Counted from the first letter of the stretch, positions 27,317 to 60,752 are shown. The stretch is 64,000 nucleotides of DNA from Blastocystis sp. Blastoise (GCA_039096225.1 JBBPEB010000002.1:992001-1056000); one strand, 5' to 3'. Numbers and translations are program-made. Notes: generated by a model from the sequence alone, not told the origin.

Positions 27317-27415
27317 CACGGATATCAAAAAAACGACAAATTCGAAAAAGTAAGCAAAAAAATTTAAGACTTTTTCAGCCAGTTACACTTATAGATGCAA
27401 TATTATTATAATAAG

Positions 27416-27903: not shown

Positions 27904-28700
27904 CACTGTTATTCTGGTTTCATTTTTTTAAAGTATATGATTGGCTAGTTTCAGTTCAGAATTTGTTCAGCCACTAAAAACAGAGTAGTTTTAGAGACTT
28001 AGGTAAAAATCGTGAATTTTGACAAAATTTTGATACTTTTTTTCAGTTGACTTTTTATTAGACTATAAAATTCATGTTTAGCATATGTTATCAAAGAATT
28101 GACAATATTTTCTTGTTTTACAAGGTCACATAATATCCAAAACGTTTTTATTTTGTTTTAAGTCGCAATTACGACAAATAATGGGGTCAATATTTTAAAA
28201 CCTTTTGTTGCCCTGTTTAAAGTTTAGACCTTCTTAGAGTCACAAGTATGCGTAAAAAGGAATAAAAAGACCTCTATGGGTCAAAACCAAAATTCAGCCA
28301 AAAAGTCAAAAATTTATATTTTTTTTACACTGAAAAATTTAACCGAGCCTATTTGTATCATGGGCAGTTAGACCAGAGTTTTGAATTTTTAAAATATCTA
28401 CGGGAATATTTTTCTTGTTCAAAACTGAGTCTATTTATATTTTAATATATATCAGAGGACACAAGTGTTTTAGAAACGTTTTTTCTTTAGATTTTATTAT
28501 CACTAACATTTCCTCATCAAAAAAACTTATCAGAGGTTATAAAAAAACTAGTTTTTCACAGAATCAAAGAAAGTCCTTCTATTTGTTGTATTTTGAAATG
28601 ATTCTGTAATAAACAGGTATTTTAAGTTAGAAACAGTAGTTTTAAAACGTTTAAAAAAACAGATCAGAGAGTCAAAGAAAATGAGTAGTTTGTTTATAAG
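27904..28700 (+). repeat. Subterminal block of the inner element, an inverted homolog of about 59450-60225
   Basis: The core 28161-28470 aligns without gaps to the reverse complement of 59670-59979, with about 23 mismatches in 310 nt by manual count. Confidence 0.95.
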
Positions 28701-28884
28701 TTATGATTAGTGGGATTCAAGAGTATTTAATAATAGTGTAGTATGTGACTTGTCACAGGTTATAATACTATTAAAATATCTAAAAAAAACAAAAAAACAA
28801 TAAAACTGAATTTCTATGTAATTTTTCTTTTTTTGACTAATAAATTTGAATTTAAACGTGAATTCGCATTTATTTTTTATTTGA

Positions 28885-32795: not shown

Positions 32796-32831
<36 letters not shown>

Positions 32832-34920: not shown

Positions 34921-35058
34921 AATATATATAAAAAATAAATAAGATAAATAAAAATATATGTATACCGTTATATCTTAATATACTAAATAATATATATAAA
35001 AAATAAATAAGATAAATAAATATATATGTATACCATTGTATCTTAATATATTAAATAC
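34921..35058. repeat. Tandem duplication of about 68 bp just 3' of the inner transposase
   Basis: Two near-identical copies of AATATATATAAAAAATAAATAAGATAAATAAA.ATATATGTATACC.TT.TATCTTAATATA.TAAAT. Confidence 0.8.
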
Positions 35059-35172
35059 TAATGAAAGAAGATAAGAATTAATAAGAATTAAATGAAATCC
35101 ATCATTTTTAATATAAATTAATAAATAAAATTAAATAAATAAAATAATAATTATATATAGGAAAATGTATTT

Positions 35173-38100: not shown

Positions 38101-38619
38101 CTTATCCTTGGTATTATAGGTACAATTGTTATTCTTCTACCTAAATAAACAATAATGCATATCTTATATATTAAAAATATAATATTATTGTCATACTTGA
38201 TTTCACCTCACAAATACTATTTGAACAAGTCCTTTTTTCTATCTCTATTGATTCTTTACCTTTATTATATCCAAGAATAGTATTACAACAATCTGATACA
38301 TATATGTTAAGAGTAGAAACTTTATTAGGTACTAATCTTATTAATTTTTGTACTACCTGTTGACCATAAAGAGGAATATCAAATTTATTTATTGATGGAT
38401 TTATTATTTCAATTATATCATTTACAAATTTATATATATTCTTAATTTTTTCCATACTAATTCTTAATGAAATCCAAAATTCAAATATAATCTTCTCTAT
38501 CTTCTCATTTACTCCATTAGAACCATGATTCTCATTTGATATCTATATATATGTATCTATATATATGTATCTATATATATATATCTATATATATATATAT
38601 GTATCTATATATATATATC

Positions 38620-38690
<71 letters not shown>

Positions 38691-38920
38691 TATAATAAAA
38701 ATACGTTATCTTTCAAAATCATATTAATGATTTTTGAGATTAAAGGATCATTTCCAGTTATATTAGATCCTTCATTTGAAACTATAGGTTCTATTACATC
38801 ATCGTGTGATATGTCCACTGAATTATCATTGACTTCTATATTTCTTTCTTCATGATGTTTTGTTTCTTTATTTTTTCTTTTATTCGGGAAGCCATTATTT
38901 GAATATAATCGGTGTGTCAT
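35173..38920 (-). CDS. CACTA/EnSpm-type DDE transposase (inner element), spliced
   Basis: Motifs [41 protein letters not shown]...FSG...[16 protein letters not shown] and [11 protein letters not shown]...[13 protein letters not shown] match the TnpD/Transposase_21 architecture. There is an N-terminal Cys cluster. The start [11 protein letters not shown] and spliced end [15 protein letters not shown] are homologous to the second copy. Confidence 0.88.
38536..38690. repeat. (TA)n microsatellite in an intron of the inner transposase
   Basis: An imperfect TA run of about 150 bp; it produces the YIYIYI shadow ORFs. Confidence 0.9.
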
Positions 38921-40315
38921 TCTATATATATCTTGTAAAATACAGATTGGAATAGGTGTATTTATTCTTAATAATATTATTGAAAGTGAATAGAAATAAT
39001 TAATATGATATATGATTTTGTACATAATCAATTTTACAACAGAAAAATTATTTTATTAGATACCTTTGTAATTTCAAATAGCACCTGGAAATACAATAAA
39101 TTCTTCACTTTATGTTGTTATTTCAATATAATATGAAATTACTTCAAGTTTTAAATGAAAACATCAGATTCATGGAAAATGTATATATTCTTGTAAAAAA
39201 ATATGGATAACCATGAATAGAAAAATAATTGAAGATTCTTTCTATTTTGTAAATACTATTTAATATTATGGTTTGCTATTTAAAAATAGAGATCACATCT
39301 ATTTATGTATAATATATTTGAAATATGTTGCAATTGGAGACAAAATTGGAGTGCCCAGTTGAATTCAATTTTATTAAAATTATGTGAATGCCAATCTTAA
39401 TAAAGTCAACTGTATTATTGTCAATTATTACTTTTATTAACATGTTAATTAATACATATTTAGGTATTTCATATAGTTATGCATTTTTGATAGAAATATT
39501 TTAATATTTTGAATGATTTAAATAGAATTACTTTATTGCTTTTAATAGGAAGAATAAGTACAAATGATTATGATTTGTTTATTTACTTAATCGATTATTA
39601 ATAATTGCTAAAGTGAAGATATTATTTCTTTGTTTATCTATATAAACTATATGAGATATTAAAGTACTCTTTTCTATATAAGTAGTTTCTTCTATAAGAA
39701 TAGTCCTGACCTATTTTCTATATAATCGGCACTCTTCTTTTCTTTATATATTCTCCTATCATTTCATTTATTCGAAATACTTTTAGAAATAGATAGAAAC
39801 TTCTAATTAATGGTTTTAGATTATATTAACTAGTCTTATTTATATTTAGCAGATACAATAATTATTCTAAGAGTGTATATATATATACATATATAATGAA
39901 TATATTATATAAATTATTTATTATATATATAGATTAACAATACTTGATGCAAACTTTATATTATATTTTAAATATTCTTTTGTTTTACTAAATTGATCAA
40001 TATATTTACATTATAATCTTCTTAAATATATATATATATAATATAAGATATTCTAGTTCATTCTGGTTTTTGTTTTTAGTTGATTGTTAGCTAAAGAAAA
40101 ACAGATTTCTTAAAAATTGTATCAATCACTAAATTTGATATATAAATACGTTTTCTTAACATAACTAACTGATAACATTTTTATGATTAAAATTATTGTA
40201 TTTGATTTTTTTATTTATATGTAAACACAAAGAAATATTTTTTACTTTTTATAGAATTTACAGAGAATAAATAAAAGAAAACCATAAAATCATATATTTT
40301 TTATTTCATTTAAAA

Positions 40316-41224
40316 ATGCCTAGAAAGTATTATAAATATTATTTTGTTATAATAAATAGAAAAATTGAGGTTGAATTGTTATCTACAGATGAAATCATTA
40401 GAATAAAAAAATTCAAAGTAGAATTTCTGAATCAATTTCGTGAATTCTATTTGTCACTTCTTAATACAACACAAAGTAGTATATATATATATTTTTCATA
40501 ATTAATAATAATTATAGAACAATATAAGAAACTGGACTATGATATGGAAATTTTTTTTCGACGAGAGGCTCTAAAAAAAGGTATTAAAGTAACATCAATT
40601 ATGTCATCAACAAAGGTCGTAAAAGTAATTATAATAATTTATACCATTATGATACACTTTTAATATTATAGTCACGTTTAAGGTTTATTCCATACGTTTT
40701 AAATAATGAAGAATTAATACAAGCAAGAATTATCTTTAAGAAAGAAAATGACTGTTTAGTAGTCGATGAAGAAAGTCAATTGTTCATATTAATTTTTCAA
40801 ATAATTAAAGAATATCTATCAGTATTTAGTGAAACCAGTAAATTAAATGATTATACAATTAAAAGAATAATAAAAAAGGCATTTTATGATAAGAAAAATA
40901 ATGGTAATTTTGTTTCATTTTTTGGATTTTTCATAGAAGATAAAGATCATCAAATAATAGAAGATATATCAAAGATTAAAGAATCATTCATGGTAAATAT
41001 TATATATATATCTATTTTATTATCTATATATATATATATTATTAATATAAATACATATATATTATATGATTCCCCGTGAAATTTACTTATATTTATAGAT
41101 TTCTAATTGGATAAGGAATGACGAAGCCTTTAATAATAAGTCATATAAGTATAAAACCAACCACGTCATAATATCTCAACTGACGAGCTGTTATGACAGA
41201 GTCAAAAATAATATCCGTCACTAA
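40316..41224 (+). CDS. Transposon accessory protein (inner element), spliced, unknown function
   Basis: The exons join to give ...KKFKVEFLNQFREFYLSLL|..YDMEIFFRREALKKGIKV..|RLRFIPYVLNNEELIQARIIFKKE...IIKKAFYDKKNNGNFVSFFGF..|..SCYDRVKNNIRH*. It is collinear with the gene at 42522-43710 and divergent from the transposase. Confidence 0.78.
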
Positions 41225-42338
41225 TTGTAAGTAATATGATTTGACAATAAAGGTTGTATTTAAAGACATACCTTTTTATTTATTCTAGAATATATTTTAT
41301 TTATTCTTATTTTTTTTATATTTATTTTATGTTTATTCAGTATGAATTAATAACGTTATATATCTTTAGTAATTCTTGATCTTATATAGGACGATGACTG
41401 ATGTAGCCGTTCTTGTGTCACATATTTATCTCTGTATGTATGTTTTTAATTCCTTGTTTTTGATTATTTTATTTTATAGTTAAGACTCTATCATGGTTGA
41501 TGTGATTATTATTTTTGCTAAACATTATTATAATTGTAAATATATTTCTTATATTCTTTTTTATAATATAATTAATTACTATCATATATAGGTTATTCGT
41601 TTGTACTATTTTATTAAAAATTATACTTACGCTTGTATATATTTATATATTTGTAATCTAATTTTCTTTTCTTTTATAGTTAATACTTAATTATGATTTA
41701 GACTTAAATATATCTGTTCCAACCAACTATATTGGTAAATATTTGTATGTATATAATTAAAATTAATACTATTTTCACTAATTTATATATTATTTTATAG
41801 GATTGAGAAAGGATTAAATTACAAAATGTATTTTATAATTTAAATATTATTTTTATAATTAATTGCTATTTATTTTATAATTAATTATTATTTATTTATA
41901 GGCATAAAACTGTACTTCATGATCTATATGATTAATTATAAACAAATATCTTCATTAAATATATATTTACGATATTTTTATTATTTAAATTGTTATCATT
42001 ATCTATTCTATTAATATTAAGAGTTTTGTTTTCTATTATATACAGAAGTTATAAATATGTTTAAAAACACTGATAATTATTAAAAAGATAATTACTTTTA
42101 TTGAAACACTAAAATTATTTTCGAATAAATAGAATGCTCTATATAAGAAATTTTGGACATTTTATTGGCTCCCATTATGAATATTCTTAATTTTATTGGA
42201 TTATTATTTTGCTTACTTCAATAGAATGTTAGAAGTTTGCTTTATTTCCCAAGGGGATGACTATGATAATATCTTAAATAATCTGAAAAATAATTAGTTG
42301 GAATTTCTCATGTATCGCTTTTTTCCTCCCGTGAAAAA

Positions 42339-42350
42339 AGACTAATAGTG
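42339..42350 (-). repeat. Terminal inverted repeat of the inner element
   Basis: AGACTAATAGTG followed by AGT. The preceding TCGCTTTTTTCCTCCCGTGAAAA resembles the reverse complement of the outer left end, TCGTTTTTTTGATATCCGTGAAAA. Confidence 0.75.
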
Positions 42351-42521: not shown

Positions 42522-43710
42522 TTAAGCATTCCTATATATAATTAGTAATAGTATATAAAGACAATAATATATAGAAATAATATAAAGATTGGAAACAATA
42601 TAAAATAATATACCAGAAAAAATGGCAACAATAGATAGCAACCAAGGTTTATTACATCCTATATATAAAACATATATATAAATACAATGATAACTATACT
42701 TTATAATGAAGAAAGAGAATAAAAAATGTATTATATCCAAAAAATAAAATATTACCAATAAAACTGGAAGTAAAAAATATTCTAAAAAATAAGAAACAAT
42801 AATATATAATAAACCAATAAAATAAATATACTGATGACGCTGATAGTGTTCTATGACTCTGTCATAGCTGATTTGAAGATTATCAATAATTTTCTTATTA
42901 TTCATAAATGAATGACTGGTAGTAGTAAAAAGAGAAGAATCTCTTTTCCATTCAGAATTCTAAAAGAATTATATATATTGACAGTATAAATAGTTAAAAT
43001 ATATACTAAAGGTTCATCTATAAGACTTGCTTTTTCAGTTATTTTGTATCCATCTTTATCAACAACAACAAAACCAAAAGAACTAGCGAAGTTACCTTTT
43101 TGTCTTTTATCATAGAACGCTTTTTTTATACATCGTATGATGTCATAGTCATTTATTGACTTAACTCTCTTATGGAGAGACATGTAGTCTTTTATGACTA
43201 AAAGAATAAGATTATATAATGAATTATTTTCGTCAACGCACACATGATCTTTCTCTTTTTTTAAAATATATTTTGCTTTTATTAATTCTGAATCTTTTAA
43301 GATATATGGAATTAGTCGTAAACACTTCTATAAAGATTATTTAATTAAAAGAATATAAAATGAGACATTAATTAGAGAACAGGTTATACTTTTATTTGTT
43401 TTGTTGTATCTTTTATGGCTATTACTTTGATATGTCTCAAAAGAGCTTCTTTTCTCAGAAAAGTCTCTATATCGTATGTAAGATATTTACATTCTTTTTT
43501 TCCTAAAATGATTATAAACATCATATAGAATATACCGGATGTGTCAGGAGAGATGAGAGATCTATAAAATTCATGAAAAGATCCCAACATTTCAATTTTG
43601 AATTGTTTTAGTTTTTTCATTTCCTTTTCAGTCAACTTAGACCTATAATTAGGGAGATAAAGATCATAAAAATGAATAAAAAATGCTTTTTGGTCATGTT
43701 TTGTTAACAT
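42522..43710 (-). CDS. Transposon accessory protein (outer element), spliced, unknown function
   Basis: KQFKIEMLGSFHEFYRSLI|..YDIETFLRKEALLRHIKV..|CLRLIPYILKDSELIKAKYILKKE...CIKKAFYDKRQKGNFASSFGF..|..ISYDRVIEHYQRH, with the same intron positions as 40316-41224. Both ends are approximate. Confidence 0.78.
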
Positions 43711-44416: not shown

Positions 44417-47400
44417 ATGGGTACACGACTTTTTGATATTCCTGGTTTTCAACCAAAAAGGAATCGTAATGATTCTACTACTTATATACATATGTATACA
44501 TAGGTATCTCAATTGATGATGAACTTCCTACTATGACAAATGATTATGAGGATACATTACAATATTGTGAAGACTCATTTCAAGGTGATAACACTAGTTC
44601 TCAAGAAGAAGTATCAATAATGGATTCACTTTTAGATAATGTAGTGAATTGCGTATATATATATTATTTAAATATGTTTTATAATGGATATAATCATTAA
44701 TCCTATTTATAATAATGCATATATATTATTGTAGAATAAAATATTCAAAGAAGACGAAAATAAAACATCAACACTTGATGATTTTATATATATTTGTTGG
44801 TGTGAACTTAGGATAAGTAAAGAACACATAAAACAACTTTACGAGTTAGCAAATAATATAATCAAATTAGTAGCACCACAACATGAATTGCTATATATTC
44901 CGAAGAGTGGCCAAGACATAGTTCGAAAGTATTGTTCTTCCAATAATGAGATACCAATTCACAAAAATCTATATATTTGCAGAAACTGTACTAAGTTACT
45001 AGGATTTAATGGAGGAAGAAATCTATTAGAGCAGGAAAAGATACAATGTAGTAATGAAGAATGTGGACCAAATACAGGTATATATATATACATATAGTCA
45101 TTATATATATACTATCTTTATATATGTTTTTTGTATATTAATATTAGTATATAATACCATTATAGTATTCTTATTATAATTTTTTGATATATTGTTCGAT
45201 ATACAATTCAATTATCATTAGATATATCATTATTATATATATTATTTCAATAATTATTATTGTTAGTATATTATAGTAATATTATTTGAAACATTCTTTC
45301 TATTATTCTTAATCTAATATTTCAATATATTGTTTGCTATATAGGATTAACGTATTTCTTTATATTTATATAATATTCCAATTCATTATTTTATTATATT
45401 ATTCAATTTATTATTTTTAATATATTTATCCTTAATCCATATTATTTTTAGTATATATATATTATTATTGAATATATAAATTTGATATACTTCTTCATAT
45501 ATACTATTTTATTAGAATAGAATATAATTCTTATTATAGACAATAATATACACTATTTTTAAATATTAATAATTTGAATATTAGTATATGTAGAGTCTAT
45601 ATCATTCATTCTTATTATATTATATATATCTCAATTTCATTCTCAATATTTCCATTATTATTATTATTGTTTATACATAATATACATTATATTCAATATA
45701 ACTATTCAAATATATAGGAATTAAAACATCAATTATTCCTCTTATACCACGAATTCGTAAATTCCTATCTTCTAAGAAGTTTATAAATGAAATATCATAC
45801 TATTCTAAAGAACAAATAATTCAATATCTTTCTATGCCTGTAGAATCTTTGCCAAGCAAGTTACCAGCCTATATGTCAGGTAAGAATTATCGACAGTATA
45901 TGAGTAAGGTCATAAATAATGGGGATATATTTTTGACATTTGATATGACATGTGATGGAATAAGTGTTTTTACAAATCCATTATCACAGATTAATCAATC
46001 TTCTTTTCCTATTCTTCTCAAGTTATTGAATTATAATTATAATAGAATATCAGATAATCGTTCTTTCTGGGTTTATTCAGTAACAAAGGAATCATATTCT
46101 AATACCATTCTAACTTTATTAATAAAAGAATTTTCTATACTATCATCTGGAATAGAAATGGATATATATATAGATAATAGGATTATAAAGAAAAAAGTGG
46201 TTGGAGTATTACTAAATGTTTTTGGTGATTGTGCAGCAGTTTCTACTATTGGTGGTTTCTCTGGATCTTCATCTTCATTCCCATGCAGATATTGTGAGCT
46301 TAATTGGAATCGAAGTACATCAGAATTCCACCAAGGAATAAAATGTACATATCAAAGTATTGAAAATTATATTACTGTTGATACTAATAATAAAAGTATT
46401 AAGAGAATCTTGTATCCTTCATGTTCTCTAAATTCTTCTCAAGATAATAATGCATATAATACTAATCAACCCAATGACAGTAATAATAGTAGTATCCAAA
46501 TTCTTACAAAATCAATTCCTTCTAGTTATATATATAATGATGCTTTGACTAAAATATCTTATTTACAAAGAACAAATTCTTCTATATTGCTTAATAGATA
46601 CAGTAATGGAGAGAGTGGATCTACTAATGGAATAAAACAAGTTCCTAGTGTTTTTGAATCATTAACCTATTTCGATTCAGCTACAAGTTTTATTCTTGAC
46701 CCTATGCATTTGTTTAATAATGTTTGTACTCTTCTTTTATGTCTTCTGTTTCATTATAATGCAAAAGATAATTACTCAAAGATATCAAAAGAAGGAATAG
46801 ATCCTAGTGAATCATTAATTGAAAAACTATGTTTTGATAAAGAAAATATGTCTATTATTACTACTAGAGTATCTGCAGTAAATACATTATATAATAACCA
46901 TGAATATGAGTTTAGATATATCATGAATGAAAAGAAGTTCTGGAGGATGTCTTCACATTCCAGAATATTCTTTACCTCCTGTATCTTACCTCTTATTACT
47001 GCAGATTTCTATTACACAGATTCTCCTCTTGTTATACTAATAGATCCATTAGCAACAATCATTCGTCAGATATATTGTTTTAAAGGTAATTCTTCTCCTC
47101 AGAATCTGGAGGTATTTAAAAATCAATGTAATATAATATGTTTCCTTTTCGAGTTATTACTCCCAAAGGAGTTGATAAATACTCAGATTCATTATCTGAA
47201 GCATCTTCCAGAGACTATTATTAACGCTGGATCAATTATATATGCTTCCACATACGAATCAGAACGATTTTACTCTTATCTAAAAAGAATAACTTTTGGA
47301 AGAAAGCAATATAATGAATCCTGTATGAGATGCATTATTGAAAGAGAAATAGCAGATATACATATTAATAATAAAAATATTGATAGTAGTAATTCTAATC

Positions 47401-48261
47401 TAAGTTTAGAAGGAAATAAAGAAACATATGATGAAGTTGGGATTGAATTAAATGAGGATGAATCATTTCAGAATGAGTTAACTGAATGTTTCAAAGAAGT
47501 TCATACAAACAATGAACGTATTAAACTCATAAAAGGTATTAGAGGAATTGATTCTATTGATTTATCTCAATCAGATATAAAAGAAATAATAAAGCTTCTT
47601 CTGTTATCAAATGACAATCATATTAAAGAAGTATTATGGAAAGATATAAATTCTAGTAAAATAGCAAATATAAATAGTAGTATTAATGATCCTGATATAT
47701 ATCGAGTATTAGTTAATAATCTAAAAAATGTAGTAATAGCATTCTATTCTGAGATAATGATAAATGATTCTATAATATTTAATTCTTCTGATATAGATGA
47801 AGGAATAGAAACAATTGATAATTCTTATATAATGTATTTAACAAATGATAATGAGAAGAAAGATATAGTACACCTAATTAAGGCATTATATTATATCCAA
47901 ATAGGATCATCTATTCTGATAAAGAAACATGAATATCCTGAGTGTCATATTTCTTCAACAGGTTTGTATTATATTGTAGAAGATTCAAATAGAATTATAC
48001 CAAAGGACAATGAGTATTCATCTTTTATACCAGTAACATGTATTGAACCAGATAATCTTATTATTGTAGACGTTCATGATGATATTCATAAGAATATTGA
48101 TGATTCATATGAAGAAAAACAAGTATATTCATTTAATCTGTTTTTGTATCAGTTTATAATTATATATATAGGCCAAGAAGGTAAAACAGAAGAATAAAAA
48201 TGTAGTTAGTTCTGAAATCGTTGTTACAAATACAGTGTTTATGACACGCCATATTACCTAG
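44417..48261 (+). CDS. CACTA/EnSpm-type DDE transposase (outer element), spliced, apparently intact
   Basis: Start MGTRLFDIPGF; Zn-finger-like ICRNC...QCSNEEC. The 787-aa ORF contains [16 protein letters not shown]...FPCRYC, LDPMHLFNN and IHYLKHLPETI...[13 protein letters not shown]. The spliced end is TNTVFMTRHIT* at 48261. Confidence 0.9.
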
Positions 48262-49934: not shown

Positions 49935-52900
49935 TTATAATACTCTCATTGATATTAAATATAGATGGACTATCCCATAAGCATATATAGTATTAGATAT
50001 AAGATATATCAGTAGTAATAGTGATAGTAGTAACATAAGTAGTAGCAGTGTAGAGATAAATTCATTCGTCTTATTCATCACTTGAGTTTCTTCTATACTT
50101 ATATTTGTTGACTCTTTATTAATTTCATTATTATTAGTATAAATAGTATAAATAGTATTTTCTTCCACTTTTACTTCTTCCTCCTTTTTATCAGAAGCTT
50201 CTATTTCGTTATTATTATTATTATCATTTTCATCTTTATTATCATTTATATTATCTTTATCATTTATATTATCTTTATCATCTTCTTTTTCTTTTATATC
50301 CATTTTTTCTTCTTGACTAACATTATCTTTTTCTGATAAATTATTATTATCTATATTTATATTATTATTATTATAAAAAGAAAATGATAAAAAAGGTGTA
50401 GATAAATCATTATAAGAAAATTGTTTTGTACATATAGATGGATCTGGCAACATAGTTATATTAGGATTTGTTAATGATTCTATTAATTTATGTTTTAAAT
50501 CTTCTAAATCATTTTGATTACCAATATGTTGTTTTTGAAGATAATGTAAATGAACTAATGGTGTAGATATTAATAATAAATGAAATTTTGAAAATGGTTC
50601 TTTTGGATCAAAATAAATAGGAAATATATTATAAATAGCCCAAAGAAAAGAAGAAGCAGATATAGTATCACTATACAAAGAAATAAGATCATAATTATAA
50701 TAATCTGAAAGAGAAGTAATTAAATCAGAATCAACTAGAGGATAAGGAGTATTAATATAAGATTTTACATCAATATGAGGTAAATTATTACATATTTCTG
50801 GTATATTCATTATAGTAGAAGGAGAAGGTCCTGAAGTAAAATGAATTGAACTATATGCTAATTTAGATGCTATATAACGTTGAGCTCGAAAATACAATTG
50901 TTGAGCTAAATATTTATTTTTAAACGTAGATATTCTTTCTTGTATTTTTTCATCAATTATAGATTGAGGTACAGATAATGAAGTTATATATAATAGTATA
51001 GAATTTGCCTATAGAATAATATATTATTATTATATTTATTATATTTATTATATTTATTATATTTATTATATTTATTATTTAAAATAATAATAAAATATAA
51101 TTATCAATAGAATAATATTATAAAATAATTATTTAAAACAATAAATAATAATATTAATATTATATATATATATACCTTTAAAATAATTTGAGCCATTTCA
51201 TAAACACGACTATTTAATAAATTTTTAATAAATTCATCTTTTGATTTAAAATTATTTTCTTTTTCTAATACCATACTTCTATATCCTTGTATACTTTTAA
51301 TACATGTTCTTAATGTACTATCCATATCTTTTGTATCATTATCAGGTATAGTAAATGACACAGGTTGTTGATATATATAAGGTGATAATGGATAAGGTGA
51401 AGTAGTAGGTGATGTATATAGAGTAGTAGATATAGGTTGAGATATAGTTGGTGAATTATGATTTGCTAATATAGAAAGATATGGAGAATTTATTGGTTGA
51501 TCAAATAGATTTGTGGATATCATTGAAGTTTTTGAATTTAATGATATTCCATTCATAGTATTATTAGTATTACTATTAGTATCATTCATATTATTATTAG
51601 TATTAACATTACTATTATCAATATTAGTATTATTATTATTAGCATCAGTATTATAATTACTATTATTACTAATATCAGTATTACTAATAATAGTATTCAT
51701 TGGATAAGAAGAAGAAAGAGATGGTGTTGATAGAATAGATGTATTAGAATAAATATTATTTGTATTCATATTATTGTTATTTCTATTTATTATAGAATTT
51801 TGTATATAATTTGATGACACATTTATATTATTCATTGTATTCATATTGATATCTATAGTATTATTAGTATTAATCATATTAGTATTAATATTATTACTAT
51901 TATTATTATGTAAACAATTTTTACATATATAATTTTTATTATCAAAATTCTAATTTAAACATATCTTCAGAAGATAATTCAGTACATGATTTATGAACCC
52001 ATCTTTCACATTTTTCACATAAATACATATTTTGATCATTTTCATTCCATTCTTTATTACATATAGGACATATTTTAAATAATGGCTCATTTAAAGCACA
52101 ATTAGTACAATAATTACGTTTAATTGAATAAGAAAACGGTAGATTTTGTTGATGACATTGATTACAATGATAACATGTATAACAATACCATGTATCTTTA
52201 GGTAATTGTAATAATGGTGGATTTAAACATTTCATATGATATGTTTTCTTACAATAATCACAACTAATAATATCTTGATCTTCTAATAATATATTATTAT
52301 TATTAGTATTATTAGCATTATTAGTATTATTTATAGAATGATTAGAAGGTGAAGATAAAGGTGTTGAAGAAGAAGATTGTAATGATGATGATTTATAATG
52401 ATTTGATATTGATTTATTCATTTCTGAAGGATATATATGTATATTATTATTATTCACATTATTATTATTATTATTCACATTATGATTATTATCATTCATA
52501 TCTTCAATATTATGATTATTATTAATATTAGGTATAGTATTATTACTTTGTGTATGAATATTTAATCCACAATGTTCACAAATACAACAATATTTACATC
52601 TCCAAGTTGTTCTTAATAAATCATTAATAACAATACGGGGTACTAAACAATTAGCATGATAACATTCACCACAATCAATACAAAATAACATTTTATCTAT
52701 ATCACCTGTACTACCACATATTATACACATATCTCTACATAATATACTTTTATATTTATCTTGTATACTTACTTTAGTTATATCTAATGGTTCTATATAA
52801 GGTAATAATGTTTTAGGTGCTAATTTTCCTATTTCATCTTTTACTTTTTCTAATTGATGTTGACGTTCACTAGCTATATGTGAATTTGTTTGTGCAGTTA

Positions 52901-54716
52901 AAGATGCTGATGGACCATTTATTTGTTCTAAACGTTTATTTTGGATATTTATTATTTCTTTTTCATATATACCAGAAGTAATATTATGACATAATTGTAT
53001 AAATATTTGTTTTCCTTCTTTATAAAAATCATCAGTTGCATTCCAAATATTATCTTCAGGATTATTATATTTATAACTATTTAAACATATTAATTCAAAA
53101 TCATTATAAAATAATTGTATAGATGCATATTCTTTTTGTTTTATCTTTTCATTCATTATATCTAAACACATAGCATTTGATTTTGATATTACTTTATAAT
53201 AATCAGGTGCAAAATTCTCTTCAACTTGTTTTGTAAATAAATGTTTTATATCAATTCTTAATAATTCTTTATGTAAATCTATCATTTTCTTTCTTCTACA
53301 ACGACTACATAAATAATTATCATAAAAACTCTTTGAAGTTGTTATACTATTTTCTTTTTTACTATTACCAGTTCTTATAGATAAAGTATCATTTCCATCT
53401 TTATCTTCTATTTCTCTTTCTCCTTCTATTTCTCCTTCTATTATAGTATCTTCTTCTTCTTGCTGATGATGATGTCTATTTTCACGTTCTTTATTCATAT
53501 ATCTTCTTACACATTTACTTTCACATGATTCATGTATATACATACCACATTCTTGGCATAATAACATATCTTTTGTATTTATATATGTTTTACGACATAT
53601 ACTACAATAATGATTCGTATTATATAATAATAAACATTTATCACAACATATTATTTGCTTTTCATTTATTACTATATAATTCCATATATTATGTTTTGTT
53701 ATATATAAATTACATCCATTACAAACTCTACAACAAAAACAATAATATTTATGTTTTTCTTCATTATAATTATGTTTTGAATCAGGATCACATTCTAAAT
53801 GTATATATAAATTACATTTTGAACATTGTAATAATGGATTTGTTAATGTTGATATATTTGATAAACAACATATACAATAAGTAGAATCTTGAGGTAATAT
53901 TTTTATTAATTCTTGTGAATGATATTGAGTTAATGGAGAAGATGATGTTAATTAACTATATATATATAGTATATTGATAAATAATATAAAAAATTTAAAT
54001 CATATATATATAATGAGAACTAATTATATGAATAATAAAATAGTTTTAAAAAATAAATAAATATAAATTATAATCAAATAATAAAGAAAAATATTATTAA
54101 AAATATATATAATAAACTTAATATAATAAATAAATATCATAATATATATACTTATAAATAGTTTTCCATCGAATAACATCTCTATCATTTAATAAATACC
54201 AACCACTTTTTATTTCTTCTTTATAAAACTTGACATAATGTTTACCTGTATTTGCATTAAAGCACGTGAGATAACCTTTTTCCCAATCTCCAAATGGATA
54301 TTTATTTATATAAATATATATATAAATAGATGTATATAACCATTCTTTATTACTTCTGATTAATTTTTCAGATATACTACTAAATGGTTCTTGACTTTTC
54401 TGAATAATTTTAGGTACTAATTCTAATTCTTCATTTATATGTTCTGTATTTTCTACAGATAATGTATAATAAACAGATAAATGTTCACGTTTTGAAGTAA
54501 ATATAGTAACATTATTTATAGGAATTTGACATAATTTATTATCAATTAAATCATATATCTGTATAATATTCTGTTTATCAATATTTGTCATACTTTCATC
54601 TTTATTATATGTTCTTATTATTTGACCAATATGCCATATTTCTTTATAAGGAGTATTATTAGGAATATTCTCTATATTAGTAGTAGTAGTAGTAGTTGTT
54701 GTAATAATCATATCAC

Positions 54717-54750
<34 letters not shown>

Positions 54751-57700
54751 ATTATTATTAATATTATTATTATCAGCAATAACATTACTATTATTATTAT
54801 TATTAATAACATTATTATTATCAACAATAACATTACTATTATTATCAATAATATCATTATTATTATTAATATTACTATTATTACTATTTGAAACACTACA
54901 AACATTAGATTCCATGGAAACATGAGTAGTTGATAGAGAAGGCGATATAATCGCGGGAATAATGCTTTCTTGAGTAGATGTAGTGATTGAATCTTTGGTA
55001 TTAAATATATCTATATCTTTATTATTATCATAATCATTATTCTTATTCATATCATTATCATTCATATTAGAATTACAATGAATTTCATTATTTTTATTAA
55101 TTTCATCATATATACCAGAATCATGAATCGAGTCATCAAGTATTTTGTCATGAATATCAATATTTTCATTATTATTATCATTATTTCCTTTTTTATTTTC
55201 ATTATTATTATTTAAAATGCCTTCAATTGTTTTAAACCATACAATTCCACCATAAACATTACATTCTCTTCTTTCTAAACACATCCAATAACCTTCACCA
55301 TCTTCAAATAATACATAATATAATAATAAATCTTGTAAATAATATAATATACGTCCTCTTAATGATGTTTCTTGTATTGTATCATATATATTCATAGAAC
55401 AACCTATTAAATCTTTTCCTAATAATAATATTTCTCCATCTTGTACTAAACTATGTTGAATCATATCTTGAGTATATATATAAGAATATATAGAAGAATC
55501 TGATAATATTGATGATGTATATATAGTATTTGTATTTATAGGCATAGTTATAGTATCGGAAATTATATTTATATTATTATTAGTAGTAGAATTATTATTA
55601 TTATTATTTATATCTGATACTTTTGTATTATTAATAGATTCCATAGAAATAGCAGTAGGAGTTGAAATAGATCGAATAGAATCTGTAGAAACAGATATAT
55701 CTTTATTTATTGATAAATTTATATTATTATTATTATTAGTTGTATTATTATTATTAGAAACAGAAGGAATAGATGTATTTATATTCATATTACTATTATT
55801 ATTATTATTAGTTGTATTATTCGTGGCAATTGTTGAATTCGGACTATATATACTTCCTTTTCTTGATATAAATACATTAGTCTCTTTTTGATTCTCCAAC
55901 GATATAGAAATATTCAAATCATTTTTAAGATCTTTTGTATCTAATTCGTGTTTATCTGGGGTACGACAAGGAGATAACGTGATTAAGGGGGATTTTGGAG
56001 CACAAACACGTGATATATATGTAGGCAATACAGGCTTAATAGACACTTGTGTAGAAGTAGTAGTAGTAGTAGTATTATTATTATTATTTGATATTATATC
56101 TATTGATGAAAGATTATTATTATCAGATAAATCTTTATTATTATTAGAAAAATCTTTATTATTATCAGATAAATCTTTATTATTATTATCAGATAAATCT
56201 TTATTATTATCAGATAAATCTTTATTGTTATTATTAGTTTCTACAGGAAGAGTATGTTTTTCAGAATTAGAATCCAATTCAGTTTGTTTCTCAATTTTAT
56301 TATTATCATTATTAATATTATCATTATTATTATTAGAATTAGATGTCTCTTCATGAATATCAATATCTACAGAATCTATACCATTCACTAAATTATGATT
56401 ATTAGATAAATCTTTATTATTATGATTATCTATGGACATTGAATGTATTAATTCTGATAAATTAGGTGATCTATTATTATTATTATTATTCTCTATATCA
56501 TCATGTATATAAATAGAGTTTTTATTATATTTCTTAAGAATATATCGACAAACAGGACATAACCATGTTTTCATATTAGTAGCTGTTACACATCCCTCAC
56601 CATTCTTCCAATGATATAAAGATACTAAAGGTGATTGAGAAGACATAATATAATGATTTATACATCCATAATGATAAGTCATAGTACAACGAGTACAAGT
56701 AATAATAAGATGATCTTGATCTATAGAAGGAGATGAAGAAGGAGAAGAAAAAGAATTCGACAAAGATTCTTTTGAATTCTTTATAGAATTCTTTATAGAA
56801 TTCTTCATTGAATTCTTCATTGAATTCTTTACAGAATTCTTTACTGAATTCTTTACTGAATTCTTTACTGAATTCTTTACTGAGTTTTGATCTTCTTCAT
56901 CTGTTGTAATATTCATATCTATATCTATATCTATATCTATATCTGTTTCTTCTTCATGATTATGATTTGATTTATATAATTCTTTTTCATTTTGATCTTT
57001 ATATTTATATTCTTTTAAACATAATGCACATTCTTCTATATATGTATTATTTAATATACATGTTCTTGGAGGTGGATTAATATAAGGTAATTGTTTTCGT
57101 TCTTCTTTTTCTATATCCATTTCAGATTCATGATCATTCTTTGTATCATTTAATATACCTGATTTATCAATAAATTTATCATTAGGAATATGTTTAGAAG
57201 CATTAGTATTATTATTATTATTATTACTAGTAGTAGTAGTAGATTTATCATTAGCATGATTATTTGATGAATTATTTCCACGGGAATTTGTTGATACTGT
57301 ATCTGTTGGTGAGTTTTGATTATTATTATTTGAATTATTATTATTATTATTCTTATTATTACCATTAGTATTATTATTATTAGTTTCATTTGATAAATCC
57401 ATAGAATGATATTCTTCAAATAATCGTGAATTTTTATGAGTAGATCCTTCTAAATCTAATAATGTTTTACCATCTATAGAAGATAATGGTTTATTAATAT
57501 GAATAGAATTATTCTTTATAGAATTATTTATAGTAGAACTCTTTATACTATCTTCTTTAGATTTACTTACAGAAGAATAATCACTTTTAATACTTGATTT
57601 TCTCTTTAAAGATTCTTTAGAAATACTATTCCTTCTGTGTTTCACATAATCATCAGAACTATCATCATCATTATTACGACGTTTATTCTTTTTTAATTTC

Positions 57701-58600
57701 ATATTTATACCTTTACGTTTATATTTATCTAAATCATTTCCATCTATATTATAAGTAGGATCATAATTATGACGTGAAATAGAATGATAATTTTCTTTTT
57801 TATCATTTTTATCATTATCAATTTCAAATGTTTCATCATTTTCATTTTCACTTTGATTATCACTATCATCATAATGATAGAATGAACCTCTTCCTCTTCC
57901 TCTTCCTCTACCTCTTCCTCTTCCATGTGATCGTAATTTACCACGACCACGGCCACGGCCACGAATAATAGGATTTGATACTCTATCGGTATCTGTTATT
58001 ATACTTGTAGTATCATCATCATTATCATTATCTTCTTTTTCTTCTTCTTCTTCTCTTTCTTTTATTTCTTCTTCTTCTTCATCATCATCTTCTTCTTTTC
58101 TTTCTTCTTTTGTGTCTTTTTCTTTATGTTTTTCTTCTTTTTGTTCTTTTTGCTTTTTTTCTTCTTGTATACTATCTTCTTTTCTTTCTTTTTCCTCTTC
58201 TTGTATAGTATTTATATTTGAATAATCAATACTATGATTTCTATTATTCATATAACTCATATCATTTATACTATCTTTAGAAGAATCACGAATAGTATTA
58301 CCTTTAACAGAAGAATTATTCTTATTATTTGATATATCTTTTGAATTATTTATATTTTTATCTTGAGATGAAGAAGATGAAGAATTAGAAATATTTGATT
58401 CTTTACGATGTTTATTTGAATGTATATTATTATTATTTATAGAAATAGAATTATCTTTAAGAGAGAGATTCGATTCATCTGTTTCTTTATTATTTTTATC
58501 TTTATTCATATTACTTATATTTGATCTATTTATATCAATCTTATTTATCTTCTTAGAGTTTATATGTTGATTATTTAGTCTAGAACTATCTCTTTTAGAT
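49935..58600 (-). CDS. Captured trithorax/KMT2C(MLL3)-like chromatin reader: multiple PHD fingers, bromodomain and Tudor/PWWP-like segments; no SET domain; one frameshift
   Basis: The PHD trio CIICGSTG...CIDCGECYHANC...WRCKYCCICEHC, CDYCKKTYHMKCLNPPL..LPKDTWYC and CPICNKEW...CEKCERWVHKSC resembles KMT2C PHD4-6. A bromodomain is present (LFTKQVEENFAPDYYKVI...MCL..MNEKI...Y...FYNDFELICLNSYKYN). Further PHD fingers lie at 53300-53890 and 56540-57040. Approximate exons: 58600-54160, 53955-51177 and 51008-49935. Confidence 0.85.
56110..56230 (-). repeat. Coding tandem repeat (N)NNKDLSD, about 5 copies
   Basis: Repeats of ATCAGATAAATCTTTATTATT on the + strand. Confidence 0.85.
56765..56885 (-). 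repeat. Coding 12-bp tandem repeat KNS[V/M/I], about 9 copies, inside a split PHD finger
   Basis: GAATTCTTTACT, GAATTCTTCATT and GAATTCTTTATA units; peptide NSVKNSVKNSVKNSVKNSVKNSMKNSMKNSIKNSIK. Confidence 0.9.
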
Positions 58601-58693
58601 CTATATATAAAATATTTTTAGAAAATAAAAAAATTATTAATAATTATAGGGTAATTTATTAATTTTTTTAAGAATACCCGTAATAAATAATCA

Positions 58694-58745
<52 letters not shown>

Positions 58746-58776
58746 TAATATATAATAATAATAATATTAATAATAA
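58694..58776. repeat. (TAA)n microsatellite in the intron joining the leader exons to the cargo
   Basis: An imperfect AAT run. Confidence 0.85.
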
Positions 58777-58791
58777 TTTCTATCTATATAC

Positions 58792-59260
58792 CGTTTAATC
58801 TTTAACAGGACTTAACTAACAATTTGATGTATGAATAGACAACAAAACCTATCATTCTATATAATATAAATTATAATTAATATAAATTGTATACAATTTA
58901 AAATAAGCCAATATTAAAAACATATTTATATTTAGTAATTGAAAAAAAAAGTAATGAATAGAAAAACAAATAATACATTTATATACTTTTTATAGCATGG
59001 CAAGTTGTTTCTTGAAAGCGTTGGAATAAGAACAAGGAAATAATCTTGTTAAACAAAAGTAGCAGCAACTCTATTGATTAAATTTTTAAGGTTGACCAAG
59101 GAGACAGTCTGATACGAAGAGGGACTCCAGAATGGAAAACCTAAAAGAATTATGAAAATAAATATAAAATATTTAATAAATAAATACTGACACAATACAT
59201 TCTTGTCTTCTAAACATACATAAACACTGTGAGAGGCTCTAATTCCTCTTAGAGACAATA
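58792..59260 (-). other. Element-derived spliced leader exons (non-coding or degenerate) upstream of the cargo
   Basis: GT-AG-bounded segments homologous to 28885-29390. The last exon (58848-58792) has stops in all three frames. Confidence 0.5.
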
Positions 59261-59449
59261 AAATAAAAATAATTATAAATTCACTAATAAATTCAAATGT
59301 TCAAGTGAAATACAAAATTTTTCATGAAAATACCTTTCTTTAATTTTTTTAATTTTTTATGACTCGCTATCATATTTATAAGTTATGACACGTTTCACAC
59401 TACACCATCTATACAATACTACTGCATCCCACACTTTTAACCTTTAAAA

Positions 59450-60225
59450 AATAACTCATTTTTGTTGACTCTCTGATCTGTTGACTAACTCGTCCAAAAA
59501 CTATTAATTATAACTTAAAACGTCCATTCGTTGATGAATTAACTCTAAAAATGACTTAAAAAAGACTTTTAGTTGATTCTGAAAAAAAACTCTTTATTTA
59601 TAAGCTTTGACATACTATTTGTATGCGGAACTTAATGTCATGATAGAATAAAATGAAAAACCTTTTTTAAAACACTTGTGTCCTCTGATATTCAATAAAA
59701 TATAAATAGACTCAGTTTTGAACGAGAAAAATATTCCCGTAAATATTTTAAAAATTGAAAACTCTGGTCTGATTGCCCATGGAACAAATAGGCTCGGCTC
59801 AATTTTTCACTGTAAAAAAAATATAAATTTTTGACTTTTTGGCTGAATTTTGGTTTTGACCCATAGAGGTCTTTTTATTCACTTTTACACATACTTGTGA
59901 CTTTCAGAGGGTCTAAACTTTAAACAGAGCAACAAGAGGTTTTAAAATATTGACCCCATTATTTGTCGGAATTACGACTTAAAACAAAAGAAAAGCGTTT
60001 TTGATATTGTGCGACCCTCTGTAAACAAAAATTAATGTCAATTCTTTGTTAAAATATGTCAAATAGGGTCTTTGAGTCTAAATCAAAAGTCGACTTAAAA
60101 TTTTTATGAAAATTTTATTTTTTTTGCCTAAGTCTTTTTTTTATTCAAATTTTATTGGCTGAATAAGTTTTGAACGAAAATTAGCCAATCAAAAACCTTC
60201 AAAAACTCAAAAGTGCCTACCAGTG
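59450..60225 (-). repeat. Right subterminal block and right terminal inverted repeat (60210-60225) of the outer element
   Basis: An inverted homolog of 27904-28700. It ends AAAGTGCCTACCAGTG and is followed by the target-site copy AAT. Confidence 0.95.
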
Positions 60226-60752
60226 AATGTAGAAAATGGAATGCGTGAAGTGATCATTCCTTATTCCATTAGATATGAAGATTCATTTAAATTGAATAAG
60301 CATAAACTTGGAAAAGGTAGTATTATTGATTTTGCAAATGAGATTGCTAAAATGAAGCCTCTATTGATGTTTGCTTGTTCTCAATTTGATCCAAATTTTA
60401 AATTACACTTTTTAAAACGAAAGAATGAAAAGAAAAGTGATACAGTCTTTAAAGTATATATATTTCAATCTCGCTATTTTATTATAATATATTTATTATT
60501 TTGTTTATTATATTATATATTATTATATTTATTATTTTGTTTATTATTATAGTTATTATTATTATATTAATTATTGTTTTATTAATAGACTAAAGATAAA
60601 GAAATAGAAAAAAGAATAAAGCACGTATGTAAAACTAATGGACCAACAAAAAAAGGCATCGAAGACACGTGTACTTATGTAAAGACGAATTTTAAAGCCC
60701 TAAGTAAAGGTATTAAACAAAGAGCAGAATCATTCTTTTTAAAAGACAAGTA

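What the first reader, a model, noticed from the sequence alone, without database searches (positions are those of the whole stretch)
49935..58600. The transposon carries a SET-less trithorax/KMT2C-like PHD-bromodomain reader
Seen: about 8.6 kb of largely open coding sequence with at least 6 PHD-type fingers, a bromodomain keeping the YN motif, Tudor/PWWP-like segments and an RG repeat, all inside the terminal repeats. No FYR or SET motifs are visible. Established: PHD and bromo modules read histone methylation and acetylation, and some transposons encode anti-silencing factors (for example the Mutator-family VANC proteins and Spm TnpA). Inferred: this is either a very large, recent passive capture or a retained reader that affects silencing or target choice.
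Basis: partly seen in the sequence, partly recalled or inferred. Interest (0 to 1): 0.85.

Follow-up and report, generated by a model that had tools for sequence, protein, structure and literature searches.

The report
Transposon carrying a truncated trithorax-like reader
In a tortoise-gut Blastocystis genome, a recently active CACTA-type DNA transposon carries the front four-fifths of a trithorax/KMT2-type chromatin gene (PHD fingers and a bromodomain, no methyltransferase part) in all four copies examined, although the copy in this window is broken in two places.

Summary
Window 49935-58509 (minus strand) is a three-exon gene with Pfam-significant PHD fingers and a bromodomain. There is no ePHD, FYR or SET domain anywhere in the window.

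The genome is Blastocystis sp. 'Blastoise' (GCA_039096225.1). The gene lies inside a CACTA/EnSpm-like transposon at 27301-60225, with 12-bp termini CACTGGTAGGCA and an AAT target duplication. A second, related element is nested at 27904-42350.

Three further copies sit at other loci of the same genome. All carry the gene, and their interiors differ by 1% or less.

The cargo is collinear (41-60% identity) with residues 311-1810 of its nearest relative, a full-length KMT2-type gene that continues into ePHD, FYRN and SET.

Changes between copies are depleted in amino-acid replacements (omega about 0.25). Yet every sampled copy has a lesion: here an in-frame TAA and a +1 base; in two others a 2.5-kb deletion.

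I read it as an accessory chromatin reader retained by the element and now decaying in individual copies. Passive capture remains a serious rival. The host parental gene was not found.

The parts
27298..27300 (.). Left copy of the 3-bp target-site duplication (AAT)
   Evidence...atcAAT|CACTGG... and ...CCAGTG|AATgta...
27301..27316 (+). Left terminal inverted repeat of the outer element (CACTGGTAGGCA, 12/12, then 15/16)
   Evidence: The same end is seen in L001 at 4617, L004 at 7336, L002 at 25280 and L009 at 6849.
27317..27903 (+). Left subterminal region with two 75-nt direct repeats (27411-27485 and 27514-27588)
   Evidence: It is contiguous with 42351 onward in copies that lack the nested element.
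27904..42350 (-). Nested second CACTA-like element (termini CACTGTTATTC...TAATAGTG). It has its own transposase gene at 38920-35176 (P0006 type, 46-51% identical to the outer one). It carries no PHD cargo.
   Evidence: The empty site cgaCAGtac is seen in L001 and L004.
42522..43710 (-). Small ORFs of the outer element (annotated 104-aa product). A counterpart lies in the nested element at 40780-41079. No family match.
44417..48197 (+). TnpD-like transposase gene of the outer element. Exons are 44417-44467, 44506-44664, 44735-45079 and 45717-48125, plus a short last exon not mapped. It corresponds to the 1011-aa protein P0001.
   Evidence: Invariant D, D, C(2)C, DxMH, H(3)H and E in ten paralogues. 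Weak DUF4218 match in 6 of 6.
49935..58509 (-). KMT2/trithorax-derived cargo gene. Exon 1 is 58509-54152, exon 2 is 53955-51176, and exon 3 is 51008-49938 plus the stop codon. The inferred ancestral frame has 2736 codons.
57888..57963 (-). RG repeats in the low-complexity N-terminal region
56524..57030 (-). Split PHD-type finger 1 (CALC ... low-complexity insert ... C-x2-C-x4-H-x2-C ... CPVC), conserved with P0189
   Evidence: E=0.005; 51% identity over 68 residues
54160..55470 (-). Two conserved beta-rich blocks (55470-55231 and 54672-54160) separated by an Asn-rich insert. They are collinear with the region at the PWWP of stramenopile KMT2 proteins. The fold is not established.
53952..53954 (-). 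In-frame TAA, second codon of exon 2. It is present in the window and L001, and is TTA in L002 and L004.
51916..53876 (-). PHD-PHD-bromodomain-PHD-PHD-PHD cassette. PHD fingers lie at 53876-53732, 52727-52589, 52283-52173 (the C-terminal half of the fifth finger) and 52070-51916. The bromodomain is at about 53270-53037.
   Evidence: KMT2D PHD4-6, E=1.7e-21; TAF1 bromodomain 2, E=2.8e-13
51943..51943 (-). Extra G that shifts the frame inside the last PHD finger. It is present in the window and L001 and absent from L002 and L004.
50451..51020 (-). C-terminal conserved block (41% identical to P0189 residues 1620-1810), with no family match. Homology to KMT2 ends here.
58510..60213 (-). Right subterminal 'arm'. 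It is shared at 73-81% with the nested element (27918-29434), at 96% with the P0002-type element L009, and at about 80% with L011.
60214..60225 (-). Right terminal inverted repeat (TGCCTACCAGTG, the reverse complement of CACTGGTAGGCA)
60226..60228 (.). Right copy of the target-site duplication (AAT)

Best explanation
SHOWN. Window 27301-60225 is a CACTA/EnSpm-like cut-and-paste DNA transposon of Blastocystis sp. 'Blastoise'. Without a second, related element nested in its left end it measures 18.5 kb.

The element encodes a roughly 1000-aa TnpD-type DDE transposase and a small ORF. Convergent with the transposase, it also encodes an 8.6-kb three-exon gene. That gene is the 5' four-fifths of a KMT2/trithorax-type gene: a low-complexity RG-rich/acidic N-terminus, a split PHD finger, two conserved beta-rich blocks, a PHD-PHD-bromodomain-PHD-PHD-PHD cassette and one more conserved block. 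It is cut off before the ePHD, FYRN/FYRC and SET domains. The introns show that it was taken up as DNA. The family moved very recently: four copies differ by 1% or less in their interiors.

INFERRED. The element kept the cargo as an accessory protein. Without a SET domain it cannot methylate histones. It can still dock on the marks its PHD fingers and bromodomain recognise, namely methylated or unmodified histone tails and acetyl-lysine, which are typical of open, transcribed chromatin.

Two modes of action are most likely. The first is tethering the transposition machinery to such chromatin, that is, target choice. The second is occupying or holding open the element's own chromatin against silencing. 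I slightly prefer target choice.

Individual copies, including this one, have since picked up disabling mutations and would depend on protein supplied in trans.
For: Evidence that this is a transposon:
- CAC...GTG termini with a 12-bp perfect inverted repeat.
- Perfect 3-bp duplications AAT/AAT here and TTG/TTG in L009.
- The same ends at four other loci with unrelated flanks.
- An exact empty site for the nested element in two copies.
- A transposase family of at least 7 subfamilies with 2-4 members each in this genome.
- Invariant D...D...C(2)C...H(3)H...E in ten paralogues. This is the CMC signature described in PMC12730594.

Evidence for the origin of the cargo:
- Collinear tblastn matches to P0189 residues 311-1810 at 41-60% identity.
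- The P0189 locus continues into ePHD, FYRN and SET and has no transposase within 10 kb.
- A clade with P0189 at 100/99 support, inside a stramenopile KMT2 group.

Evidence for retention:
- The cargo is present in all four R-type copies.
- Each lesion is confined to one of the two copy lineages (window with L001, or L002 with L004), so the common ancestor had an open 2736-codon frame.
- Amino-acid replacements are depleted relative to a spectrum-matched neutral expectation. The PHD-bromo part has 8 observed against 14.2 expected (P=4e-4). The downstream part has 8 against 13.0 (P=2e-3).
- The zinc ligands and the bromodomain YN motif are intact.

Weak support for target choice: the window copy splits an ORF 18 codons after its ATG, the L004 copy abuts an ORF, and L009 sits between two gene models with the same domains.
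Against: - All four sampled copies are damaged. The window and L001 have a TAA at 53954-53952 and an extra base at 51943. L002 and L004 have a frame-changing deletion of about 2.5 kb that removes PHD1 and the first conserved block. L002 also has an N-terminal stop.
- A derivative element (L009) keeps only the first ~555 codons of the gene. It still has perfect ends and a duplication, and it belongs to a multi-copy subfamily.
- The density of variable sites is the same in coding and non-coding parts, about 0.9%. Strong constraint would predict a lower density in the coding parts.
- The replacement test rests on only 35 changes.
- There are no expression data.
- The parental host gene of this genome was not found, so the age of the capture is unknown.
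- The assembly is nanopore-based and was polished with short reads. In near-identical repeats, such polishing can create or move small variants.
Confidence: 0.5

Rival explanations
1. Passive capture. The element picked up a large piece of the host KMT2 gene, as plant Pack-CACTA and Pack-MULE elements pick up gene fragments. The piece does nothing for the element. It looks well preserved only because the capture and the burst of copies are recent, and it is now decaying neutrally.
For: - Every copy seen has at least one disabling lesion.
- The L009 derivative lost nearly all of the cargo and still has intact ends.
- Coding and non-coding parts vary equally, about 0.9%.
- Another subfamily (L011) carries unrelated UCH/USP-like ORFs in the same position, which suggests a general habit of picking up host DNA.
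Against: - Replacements are depleted to about half of the spectrum-matched expectation in two separate parts of the gene (P=4e-4 and 2e-3).
- Open frames of 1453, 669 and, in L002 and L004, 964 codons persist in a genome with 20% G+C, where stop codons are common by chance.
- The splice sites of both introns are kept.
- The fragment runs from the N-terminal region to a point between conserved domains rather than being a random internal piece.
Confidence: 0.35
2. The truncated protein acts on the host rather than for the element. It would be a SET-less competitor of the cell's own KMT2 complex (dominant negative), or a copy on its way to domestication as a host chromatin factor.
For: - It keeps the chromatin-docking modules of the family and lacks the catalytic and FYR parts.
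- The same signs of constraint apply as above.
Against: - All copies lie inside mobile, very young elements at different loci. None is at a fixed locus without element ends.
- All copies are damaged.
- No orthologue without an element was found.
Confidence: 0.1
3. This is not a transposon cargo at all. It is an ordinary host gene in a segmentally duplicated or mis-assembled region that happens to be flanked by repeats.
For: The assembly comes from xenic cultures and long reads. Some proteins of this genome occur on two contigs.
Against: - The duplicated block ends to the base at CACTGG...CCAGTG termini in every copy, and the flanks are unrelated.
- 3-bp duplications are present.
- The copies differ in structure: nested element, 2.7-kb insertion, 2.5-kb deletion.
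- A conserved DDE transposase gene sits beside the cargo.
Confidence: 0.03

Closest known systems
EnSpm/CACTA superfamily of DNA transposons (CMC group)
   Same: [quoted passage not shown] There is also a second small ORF. The criteria are as stated in PMC12730594.
   Different: No match to Pfam Transposase_21, and only a sub-threshold DUF4218 match. The host is a gut stramenopile. I found no description of this family in Blastocystis. The cargo is 8.6 kb.
DNA transposons of fungi that encode a TET/JBP dioxygenase (Kojima 2025, PMC12730594; earlier Iyer et al. 2014, cited from memory)
   Same: Cut-and-paste elements, EnSpm among them, carry a separate gene for an epigenetic factor of host origin. 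That gene is kept across copies and is thought to help the element escape silencing.
   Different: There the cargo is an enzyme acting on DNA methylation. Here it is a histone-mark reader that has lost its enzyme domain. The lineage and the parental gene family are also different.
VANC anti-silencing proteins of Arabidopsis VANDAL (Mutator) elements, and TnpA of En/Spm
   Same: An accessory, non-transposase protein encoded by a DNA transposon that changes the element's own chromatin state.
   Different: Those proteins bind element DNA sequence-specifically and are not derived from a histone-reader gene. No DNA-binding module was recognised here.
Gene-fragment capture by plant CACTA and Mutator elements (Pack-CACTA, Pack-MULE; from memory)
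   Same: Host gene DNA, introns included, lies inside the element between the terminal regions and is amplified with it.
   Different: Captured pieces are usually short, chimeric and non-coding. Here about 2700 codons of one gene are kept in order with working splice sites and signs of constraint.
KMT2/trithorax histone H3K4 methyltransferases (KMT2A-D; stramenopile homologues P0172, P0174, P0189)
   Same: The order of modules is the same: N-terminal PWWP-region-like blocks, PHD fingers, bromodomain, triple PHD. The best solved match is KMT2D PHD4-6. The cargo falls in a tree clade with a SET-bearing relative.
   Different: It lacks ePHD, FYRN, FYRC and SET, so it cannot be a methyltransferase.
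Chromoviruses (Ty3/gypsy elements with a chromodomain on the integrase; from memory)
   Same: A mobile element uses a histone-mark reader, there to choose insertion sites.
   Different: Here it is a separate, very large protein of a DNA transposon, and targeting is only a hypothesis.

Membership tests
EnSpm/CACTA (CMC) DNA transposons | Termini 5'-CAC...GTG-3' forming terminal inverted repeats | tested here: met
   CACTGGTAGGCA at 27301 and its reverse complement ending at 60225. The same termini are found in L001, L002, L004 and L009.
EnSpm/CACTA (CMC) DNA transposons | 3-bp target-site duplication | tested here: met
   AAT/AAT in the window and TTG/TTG in L009. L002 shows AAT/ATA, and the nested element shows CAG/(G)AG, which is imperfect.
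EnSpm/CACTA (CMC) DNA transposons | [quoted passage not shown] | tested here: met
   In ten paralogues at 35-57% identity, D260, D351, C370-x2-C373, H672-x3-H676 and E696 (P0001 numbering) are invariant. Assigning these residues to the catalytic triad is by motif order, not by structure.
EnSpm/CACTA (CMC) DNA transposons | Significant sequence match to known CACTA transposase models (Pfam Transposase_21 or DUF4218) | tested here: inconclusive
   Only DUF4218, at E=1e-4 to 8e-2 and below the curated cut-off. It falls on the same region in 6 of 6 proteins.
EnSpm/CACTA (CMC) DNA transposons | Mobility: several copies at unrelated loci, and empty sites | tested here: met
   Four cargo-bearing copies plus one derivative. 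An empty site for the nested element is seen in L001 and L004. No empty site was available for the outer element.
KMT2/trithorax histone methyltransferases | SET (and post-SET) catalytic domain | tested here: not met
   No SET in any piece or anywhere in the window by tblastn with SET-bearing relatives.
KMT2/trithorax histone methyltransferases | FYRN/FYRC and ePHD modules | tested here: not met
   Absent from the window. Of these, ePHD and FYRN are present in the nearest relative's locus L005, and all three are present in oomycete homologues.
KMT2/trithorax histone methyltransferases | Homology and collinearity of the N-terminal reader part (PHD-bromodomain-PHD cassette) | tested here: met
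   Six collinear matches to P0189. Clade with P0189 at 100/99 support. Solved match to KMT2D PHD4-6 at E=1.7e-21.
Bromodomain | Significant profile match and the conserved Asn of the acetyl-lysine pocket | tested here: met
   PF00439, E=9.5e-14, profile positions 6-81 of 84. The motif NSYKYN is present. Binding itself was not tested.
PHD finger | C4HC3 zinc-ligand pattern with a significant profile match | tested here: met
   PF00628, E=1.5e-21, three stretches. Three fingers fit a strict pattern and three more fit it with inserts. The last finger is interrupted by the extra base in this copy.
Tudor / PWWP readers | Recognisable Tudor or PWWP fold or profile match | tested here: inconclusive
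   No Pfam match at E up to 5 and no match to solved structures. The AlphaFold model had pLDDT 30. hhalign to the region at the PWWP start of stramenopile KMT2 proteins gave E=8e-4 at 24% probability.

The most novel reading that the evidence does not exclude
It uses that protein to find or keep active chromatin. This would be the first DNA transposon shown to carry a histone-mark reader taken from a chromatin writer. The same cargo position in sister subfamilies holds other host-derived genes (a deubiquitinase-like one in L011), so the family would be a natural shuttle for chromatin and ubiquitin-pathway genes.
Probability: 0.3. Interest if true: 0.85.

Novelty: new variant of a known kind. 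Interest (0 to 1): 0.62.

Why it matters
Transposons that carry epigenetic factors are rare. The known cases are TET/JBP enzymes in fungal elements and VANC in Arabidopsis. They show how mobile DNA fights or exploits host chromatin control.

A young, multi-copy element with a 2700-codon histone-reader gene would add a new class of such cargo: a reader rather than an enzyme. It occurs in a little-studied gut protist lineage, for which the genome paper reports only overall repeat content.

It makes two questions testable. Does a SET-less KMT2 fragment steer insertion to active genes? Or does it protect the element from silencing?

It also matters for annotation. These genes are currently filed as 'hypothetical protein' host genes (2378 aa and 1836 aa), and the 1836-aa model skips part of the last PHD finger through an invented intron.

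Tried and rejected
- Fold of the two conserved N-terminal blocks. Pfam at E up to 5, sequence search of solved structures, BLASTP against PWWP-bearing homologues, an AlphaFold model from a two-row alignment (pLDDT 30) and hhalign all failed. None gave a usable assignment, so I did not run a fold search on the poor model.\n- Parental host gene in the same genome. Two word-index searches and the representative search returned no SET-bearing Blastocystis 'Blastoise' protein. Name look-ups for 20 of the hits also found none. AT-rich candidates P0026 and P0152 turned out to be a JGI metagenome fragment (P0026) and an unrelated bromodomain protein (P0152). This is not proof of absence, because the 2378-aa models of this very gene are also missing from those results.\n- Metagenome scan for close relatives of the PHD-bromo piece: nothing.\n- Identity of the organism behind the nearest relative (L005, 43% G+C). 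A test for the 30-bp introns typical of human Blastocystis subtypes was negative or uninformative.\n- The idea that the N-terminal ~555 codons are an element-native gene onto which KMT2 was fused. I rejected it because homology to P0189 starts upstream of the L009 breakpoint.\n- My first reading that the window's transposase gene is frameshifted at 45295. I rejected it because that difference lies in an intron and all mapped exons match P0001.\n- The long inverted repeat as the element's terminal repeats. I rejected it.\n- Pfam on the small ORFs and on the flanking ORFs: nothing.

Full report
**What the window is.** The window has about 20% G+C. Its transposase-like ORF matches proteins of Blastocystis sp. 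'Blastoise', assembly GCA_039096225.1. Locus L003, from contig JBBPEB010000002.1, is 100% identical to window 35834-58261. The genome paper for tortoise isolates reports 21-23% G+C, longer introns, nanopore assembly with short-read polishing, and only overall repeat content. Nothing here is human. The unrelated loci L006-L008, fetched by one look-up, were not used further.

**The observation.** On the minus strand there are four long stop-to-stop frames: 58617-54121, 53951-51945, 51949-51107 and 51008-49938. Pfam finds PHD (E=1.5e-21, three stretches) and Bromodomain (E=9.5e-14) in the second frame. It finds a sub-threshold split PHD in the first. A pattern scan gives three strict and three insert-bearing C4HC3 fingers, RG runs at 57963-57888 and the bromodomain YN motif. 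Two KMT2 proteins with ePHD, FYR and SET domains hit only the PHD-bromo part of the 64 kb. The exception is the 'Tudor/PWWP-like' blocks, which are conserved but could not be assigned to a fold.

**Gene structure.** The annotated product of a sister copy (P0011) and the sequence itself define the structure:
- Exon 1 is 58509-54152.
- Intron 1 is 54151-53956, with GT..AG boundaries.
- Exon 2 is 53955-51176.
- Intron 2 is 51175-51009.
- Exon 3 is 51008-49938.

Read this way the ancestral frame has 2736 codons. I searched the pieces separately, by reference. I did not hand a joined spliced model to any search or folding tool. The joined frame was used only inside scripts, for coordinates and substitution counts.

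- The long inverted repeat (27918-29434 against 60230-58700, 73-81% identical) turned out to be the homologous right arms of two different elements lying in opposite orientation.
- The real ends of the element that holds the gene are CACTGGTAGGCA at 27301 and its reverse complement ending at 60225. They are flanked by AAT on both sides.
- A second element is nested at 27904-42350. It has its own transposase gene, only 46-51% identical at the protein level.
- Copies L001 and L004 lack the nested element and show the uninterrupted site cgaCAGtac.
- Removing the outer element and one AAT joins an 18-codon ORF that starts with ATG (27247-27300) in frame to a 108-codon ORF (60226-60552). The element therefore appears to have landed in a coding exon.

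**Other copies.** The same element occurs on three other contigs of the same assembly.
- L001 (contig 14) is 99.99-100% identical, has no nested element and has an extra 2718 bp at window 44032.
- L002 (contig 27) and L004 (contig 26) also lack the nested element.
- All three have unrelated flanks and the same terminal sequence at the left end, and L002 shows the right end as well.
- All carry the PHD-bromodomain gene next to the transposase gene.
- Interior divergence is 1% or less. The left 1.9 kb of L002 is about 20% divergent and its right arm 4-7%, so the copies are mosaics.

A fifth element, L009, has a transposase only 56% identical. It has the same termini and a perfect TTG/TTG duplication. 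Its right 3.4 kb is 94% identical to the window (56847-60225). It keeps only the first ~555 codons of the gene. Homology to the KMT2 relative begins upstream of that breakpoint, so L009 is a deletion or recombination derivative and not a precursor.

**Transposase and superfamily.** The 1011-aa protein P0001 maps to window exons 44417-48125 without change. The family has at least seven subfamilies with 2-4 members each in this genome. Ten paralogues at 35-57% identity keep D260, D351, C370-x2-C373, DxMH (508-511), H672-x3-H676 and E696 invariant. [quoted passage not shown] All are met here. Pfam gives only a sub-threshold DUF4218 match, though it is consistent across all six proteins tested.

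**Where the cargo comes from.**
- The best hits of the PHD-bromo piece outside the genome are stramenopile 'histone-lysine N-methyltransferases'. Their architecture is PWWP, PHD fingers, bromodomain, PHD fingers, ePHD, FYRN, FYRC and SET.
- The nearest relative is P0189, a 2235-aa ORF on a 34-kb metagenome contig (L005, 43% G+C). Six collinear matches cover P0189 residues 311-1810 at 41-60% identity.
- L005 continues into ePHD, FYRN and SET and has no transposase within 10 kb.
- In a maximum-likelihood tree the two transposon copies group with P0189 (100/99 support). That group is sister to three other uncultured sequences (100/98), among diatom and oomycete KMT2 proteins.
- The triple PHD after the bromodomain best matches KMT2D PHD4-6 among solved structures (E=1.7e-21), and the bromodomain best matches TAF1 bromodomain 2. 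The ePHD of P0189 matches KMT2A/B and trithorax.

The cargo is thus the front part of a KMT2-family gene, cut between the last conserved block and the ePHD. I could not find the parental gene of this genome. The tools do not allow a DNA search of the assembly.

**Is it kept or decaying?** Both signals are present.

Lesions:
- The window and L001 share a TAA at 53954-53952, where L002 and L004 have TTA.
- The window and L001 also share an extra G at 51943, inside the last PHD finger. It is absent from L002 and L004, where the frame runs on for 964 codons.
- L001 has one more single-base difference at 58153.
- L002 and L004 share a deletion of about 2.5 kb (57319-54764). It removes PHD1 and the first conserved block and changes the frame.
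- L002 also has an early stop.

Each lesion is limited to one of the two copy lineages, so their common ancestor was intact.

Selection:
- I polarised the changes among three lineages and compared them with an expectation that keeps the observed mutation spectrum.
- Replacements are depleted. The PHD-bromo part has 8 observed against 14.2 expected (P=4e-4). The downstream part has 8 against 13.0 (P=2e-3). Omega is about 0.25.
- Simple Nei-Gojobori ratios for the same parts are mostly 0.07-0.24, with one noisy value of 0.72 from four differences.

Against strong constraint, variable sites are as dense in coding as in non-coding parts (about 0.9%). The counts are small, and polishing errors in repeats cannot be excluded.

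**How it most likely works.** It is shown that this is a young CACTA-like element, that its KMT2-derived cargo lacks SET, and that the cargo is present in all copies of the subfamily. The rest is inference. I infer that the protein was an accessory factor of the element that docks on histone marks of open chromatin. Target choice is my first guess. It receives weak support from three of five insertions touching coding sequence. Protection of the element's own chromatin is a close second, by analogy with fungal transposons carrying TET/JBP and with VANC (from memory). Passive capture followed by decay remains a serious rival at about 0.35.

**Novelty.** A full-text search for CACTA elements with PHD and bromodomain cargo found nothing relevant. 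A search for CACTA/EnSpm elements in Blastocystis also found nothing. The kind of system, a DNA transposon with an epigenetic accessory gene of host origin, is already known. The cargo class (a histone reader derived from a histone writer), its size and the host lineage are new.

Noticed in passing
window 27904-42350: A second CACTA-like element is nested in the left end of the outer one. Its termini are CACTGTTATTC...TAATAGTG. It has its own transposase gene (38920-35176, minus strand, P0006 type) and about 6 kb (29434-35190) without long ORFs. It carries no PHD cargo. Its flanks are CAG and (G)AG.
   Followed up: partly
window 27247-27300 and 60226-60552: The two flanks of the outer element join in frame once the element and one AAT are removed (MSEVTIEMQNGEITRVIN | VENGMREV...). 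The element therefore seems to have split a coding exon 18 codons after its ATG. The ORF has no Pfam match.
   Followed up: partly
L011:13760-23461: In a P0007-type element, the space between the transposase gene and the right arm holds annotated genes of 1191 aa and 591 aa. Their ORFs match UCH (E=4e-6) and, weakly, DUF3517, so they look like deubiquitinase genes. This may be a different host-derived cargo in the same position. The element ends lie outside the fetched locus.
   Followed up: partly
L009:6849-20993: A 14.1-kb element has a divergent transposase (56% identity) but a right 3.4 kb that is 94% identical to the window's. It has a perfect TTG duplication. It sits between two gene models with the same He_PIG and HRM domains, as if it had split one gene. 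This is evidence of recombination between subfamilies.
   Followed up: partly
L002:24300-25280 and L002:9146-10600, against window 27301-27903, 42351-43650 and 59285-60225: The ends of copy L002 are 4-20% divergent from the window, while the 10-kb interior differs by less than 1%. The copies are mosaics.
   Followed up: no
L001:6899-9617 (at window position 44032): A 2718-bp insertion is present only in copy L001, upstream of the transposase gene. Its content was not examined.
   Followed up: no
L010:1-5776: A Helitron-like gene (Helitron_like_N plus PIF1 helicase, 1862 aa, cut by the locus end) lies next to a P0004-type transposase gene.
   Followed up: no
window 12673-13037 and 24817-25227; L002:26465-26874: Another repeat family (76-78% identical, inverted within the window) overlaps the start of an 840-aa gene model in L002. 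In addition, L001's left flank is 87% identical to window 11821-15131.
   Followed up: no
window 49935-57926 (annotated 2378-aa model) and L002:10001-17016 (P0011, 1836 aa): The public model P0011 skips part of the last PHD finger through an intron that the open frame of L002 does not need. The 2378-aa models, whose sequences I could not read, start out of frame with the 58509 ATG. They hold about 490 nt of introns beyond the two real ones, so they must bridge the stop and the frameshift. All these models are named 'hypothetical protein'.
   Followed up: partly
window 10029-10602: A long imperfect 9-12-nt periodic repeat (rich in Asp, Ser and Asn codons on the minus strand) lies inside an ORF. 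It is typical of the low-complexity coding sequence of this genome.
   Followed up: no
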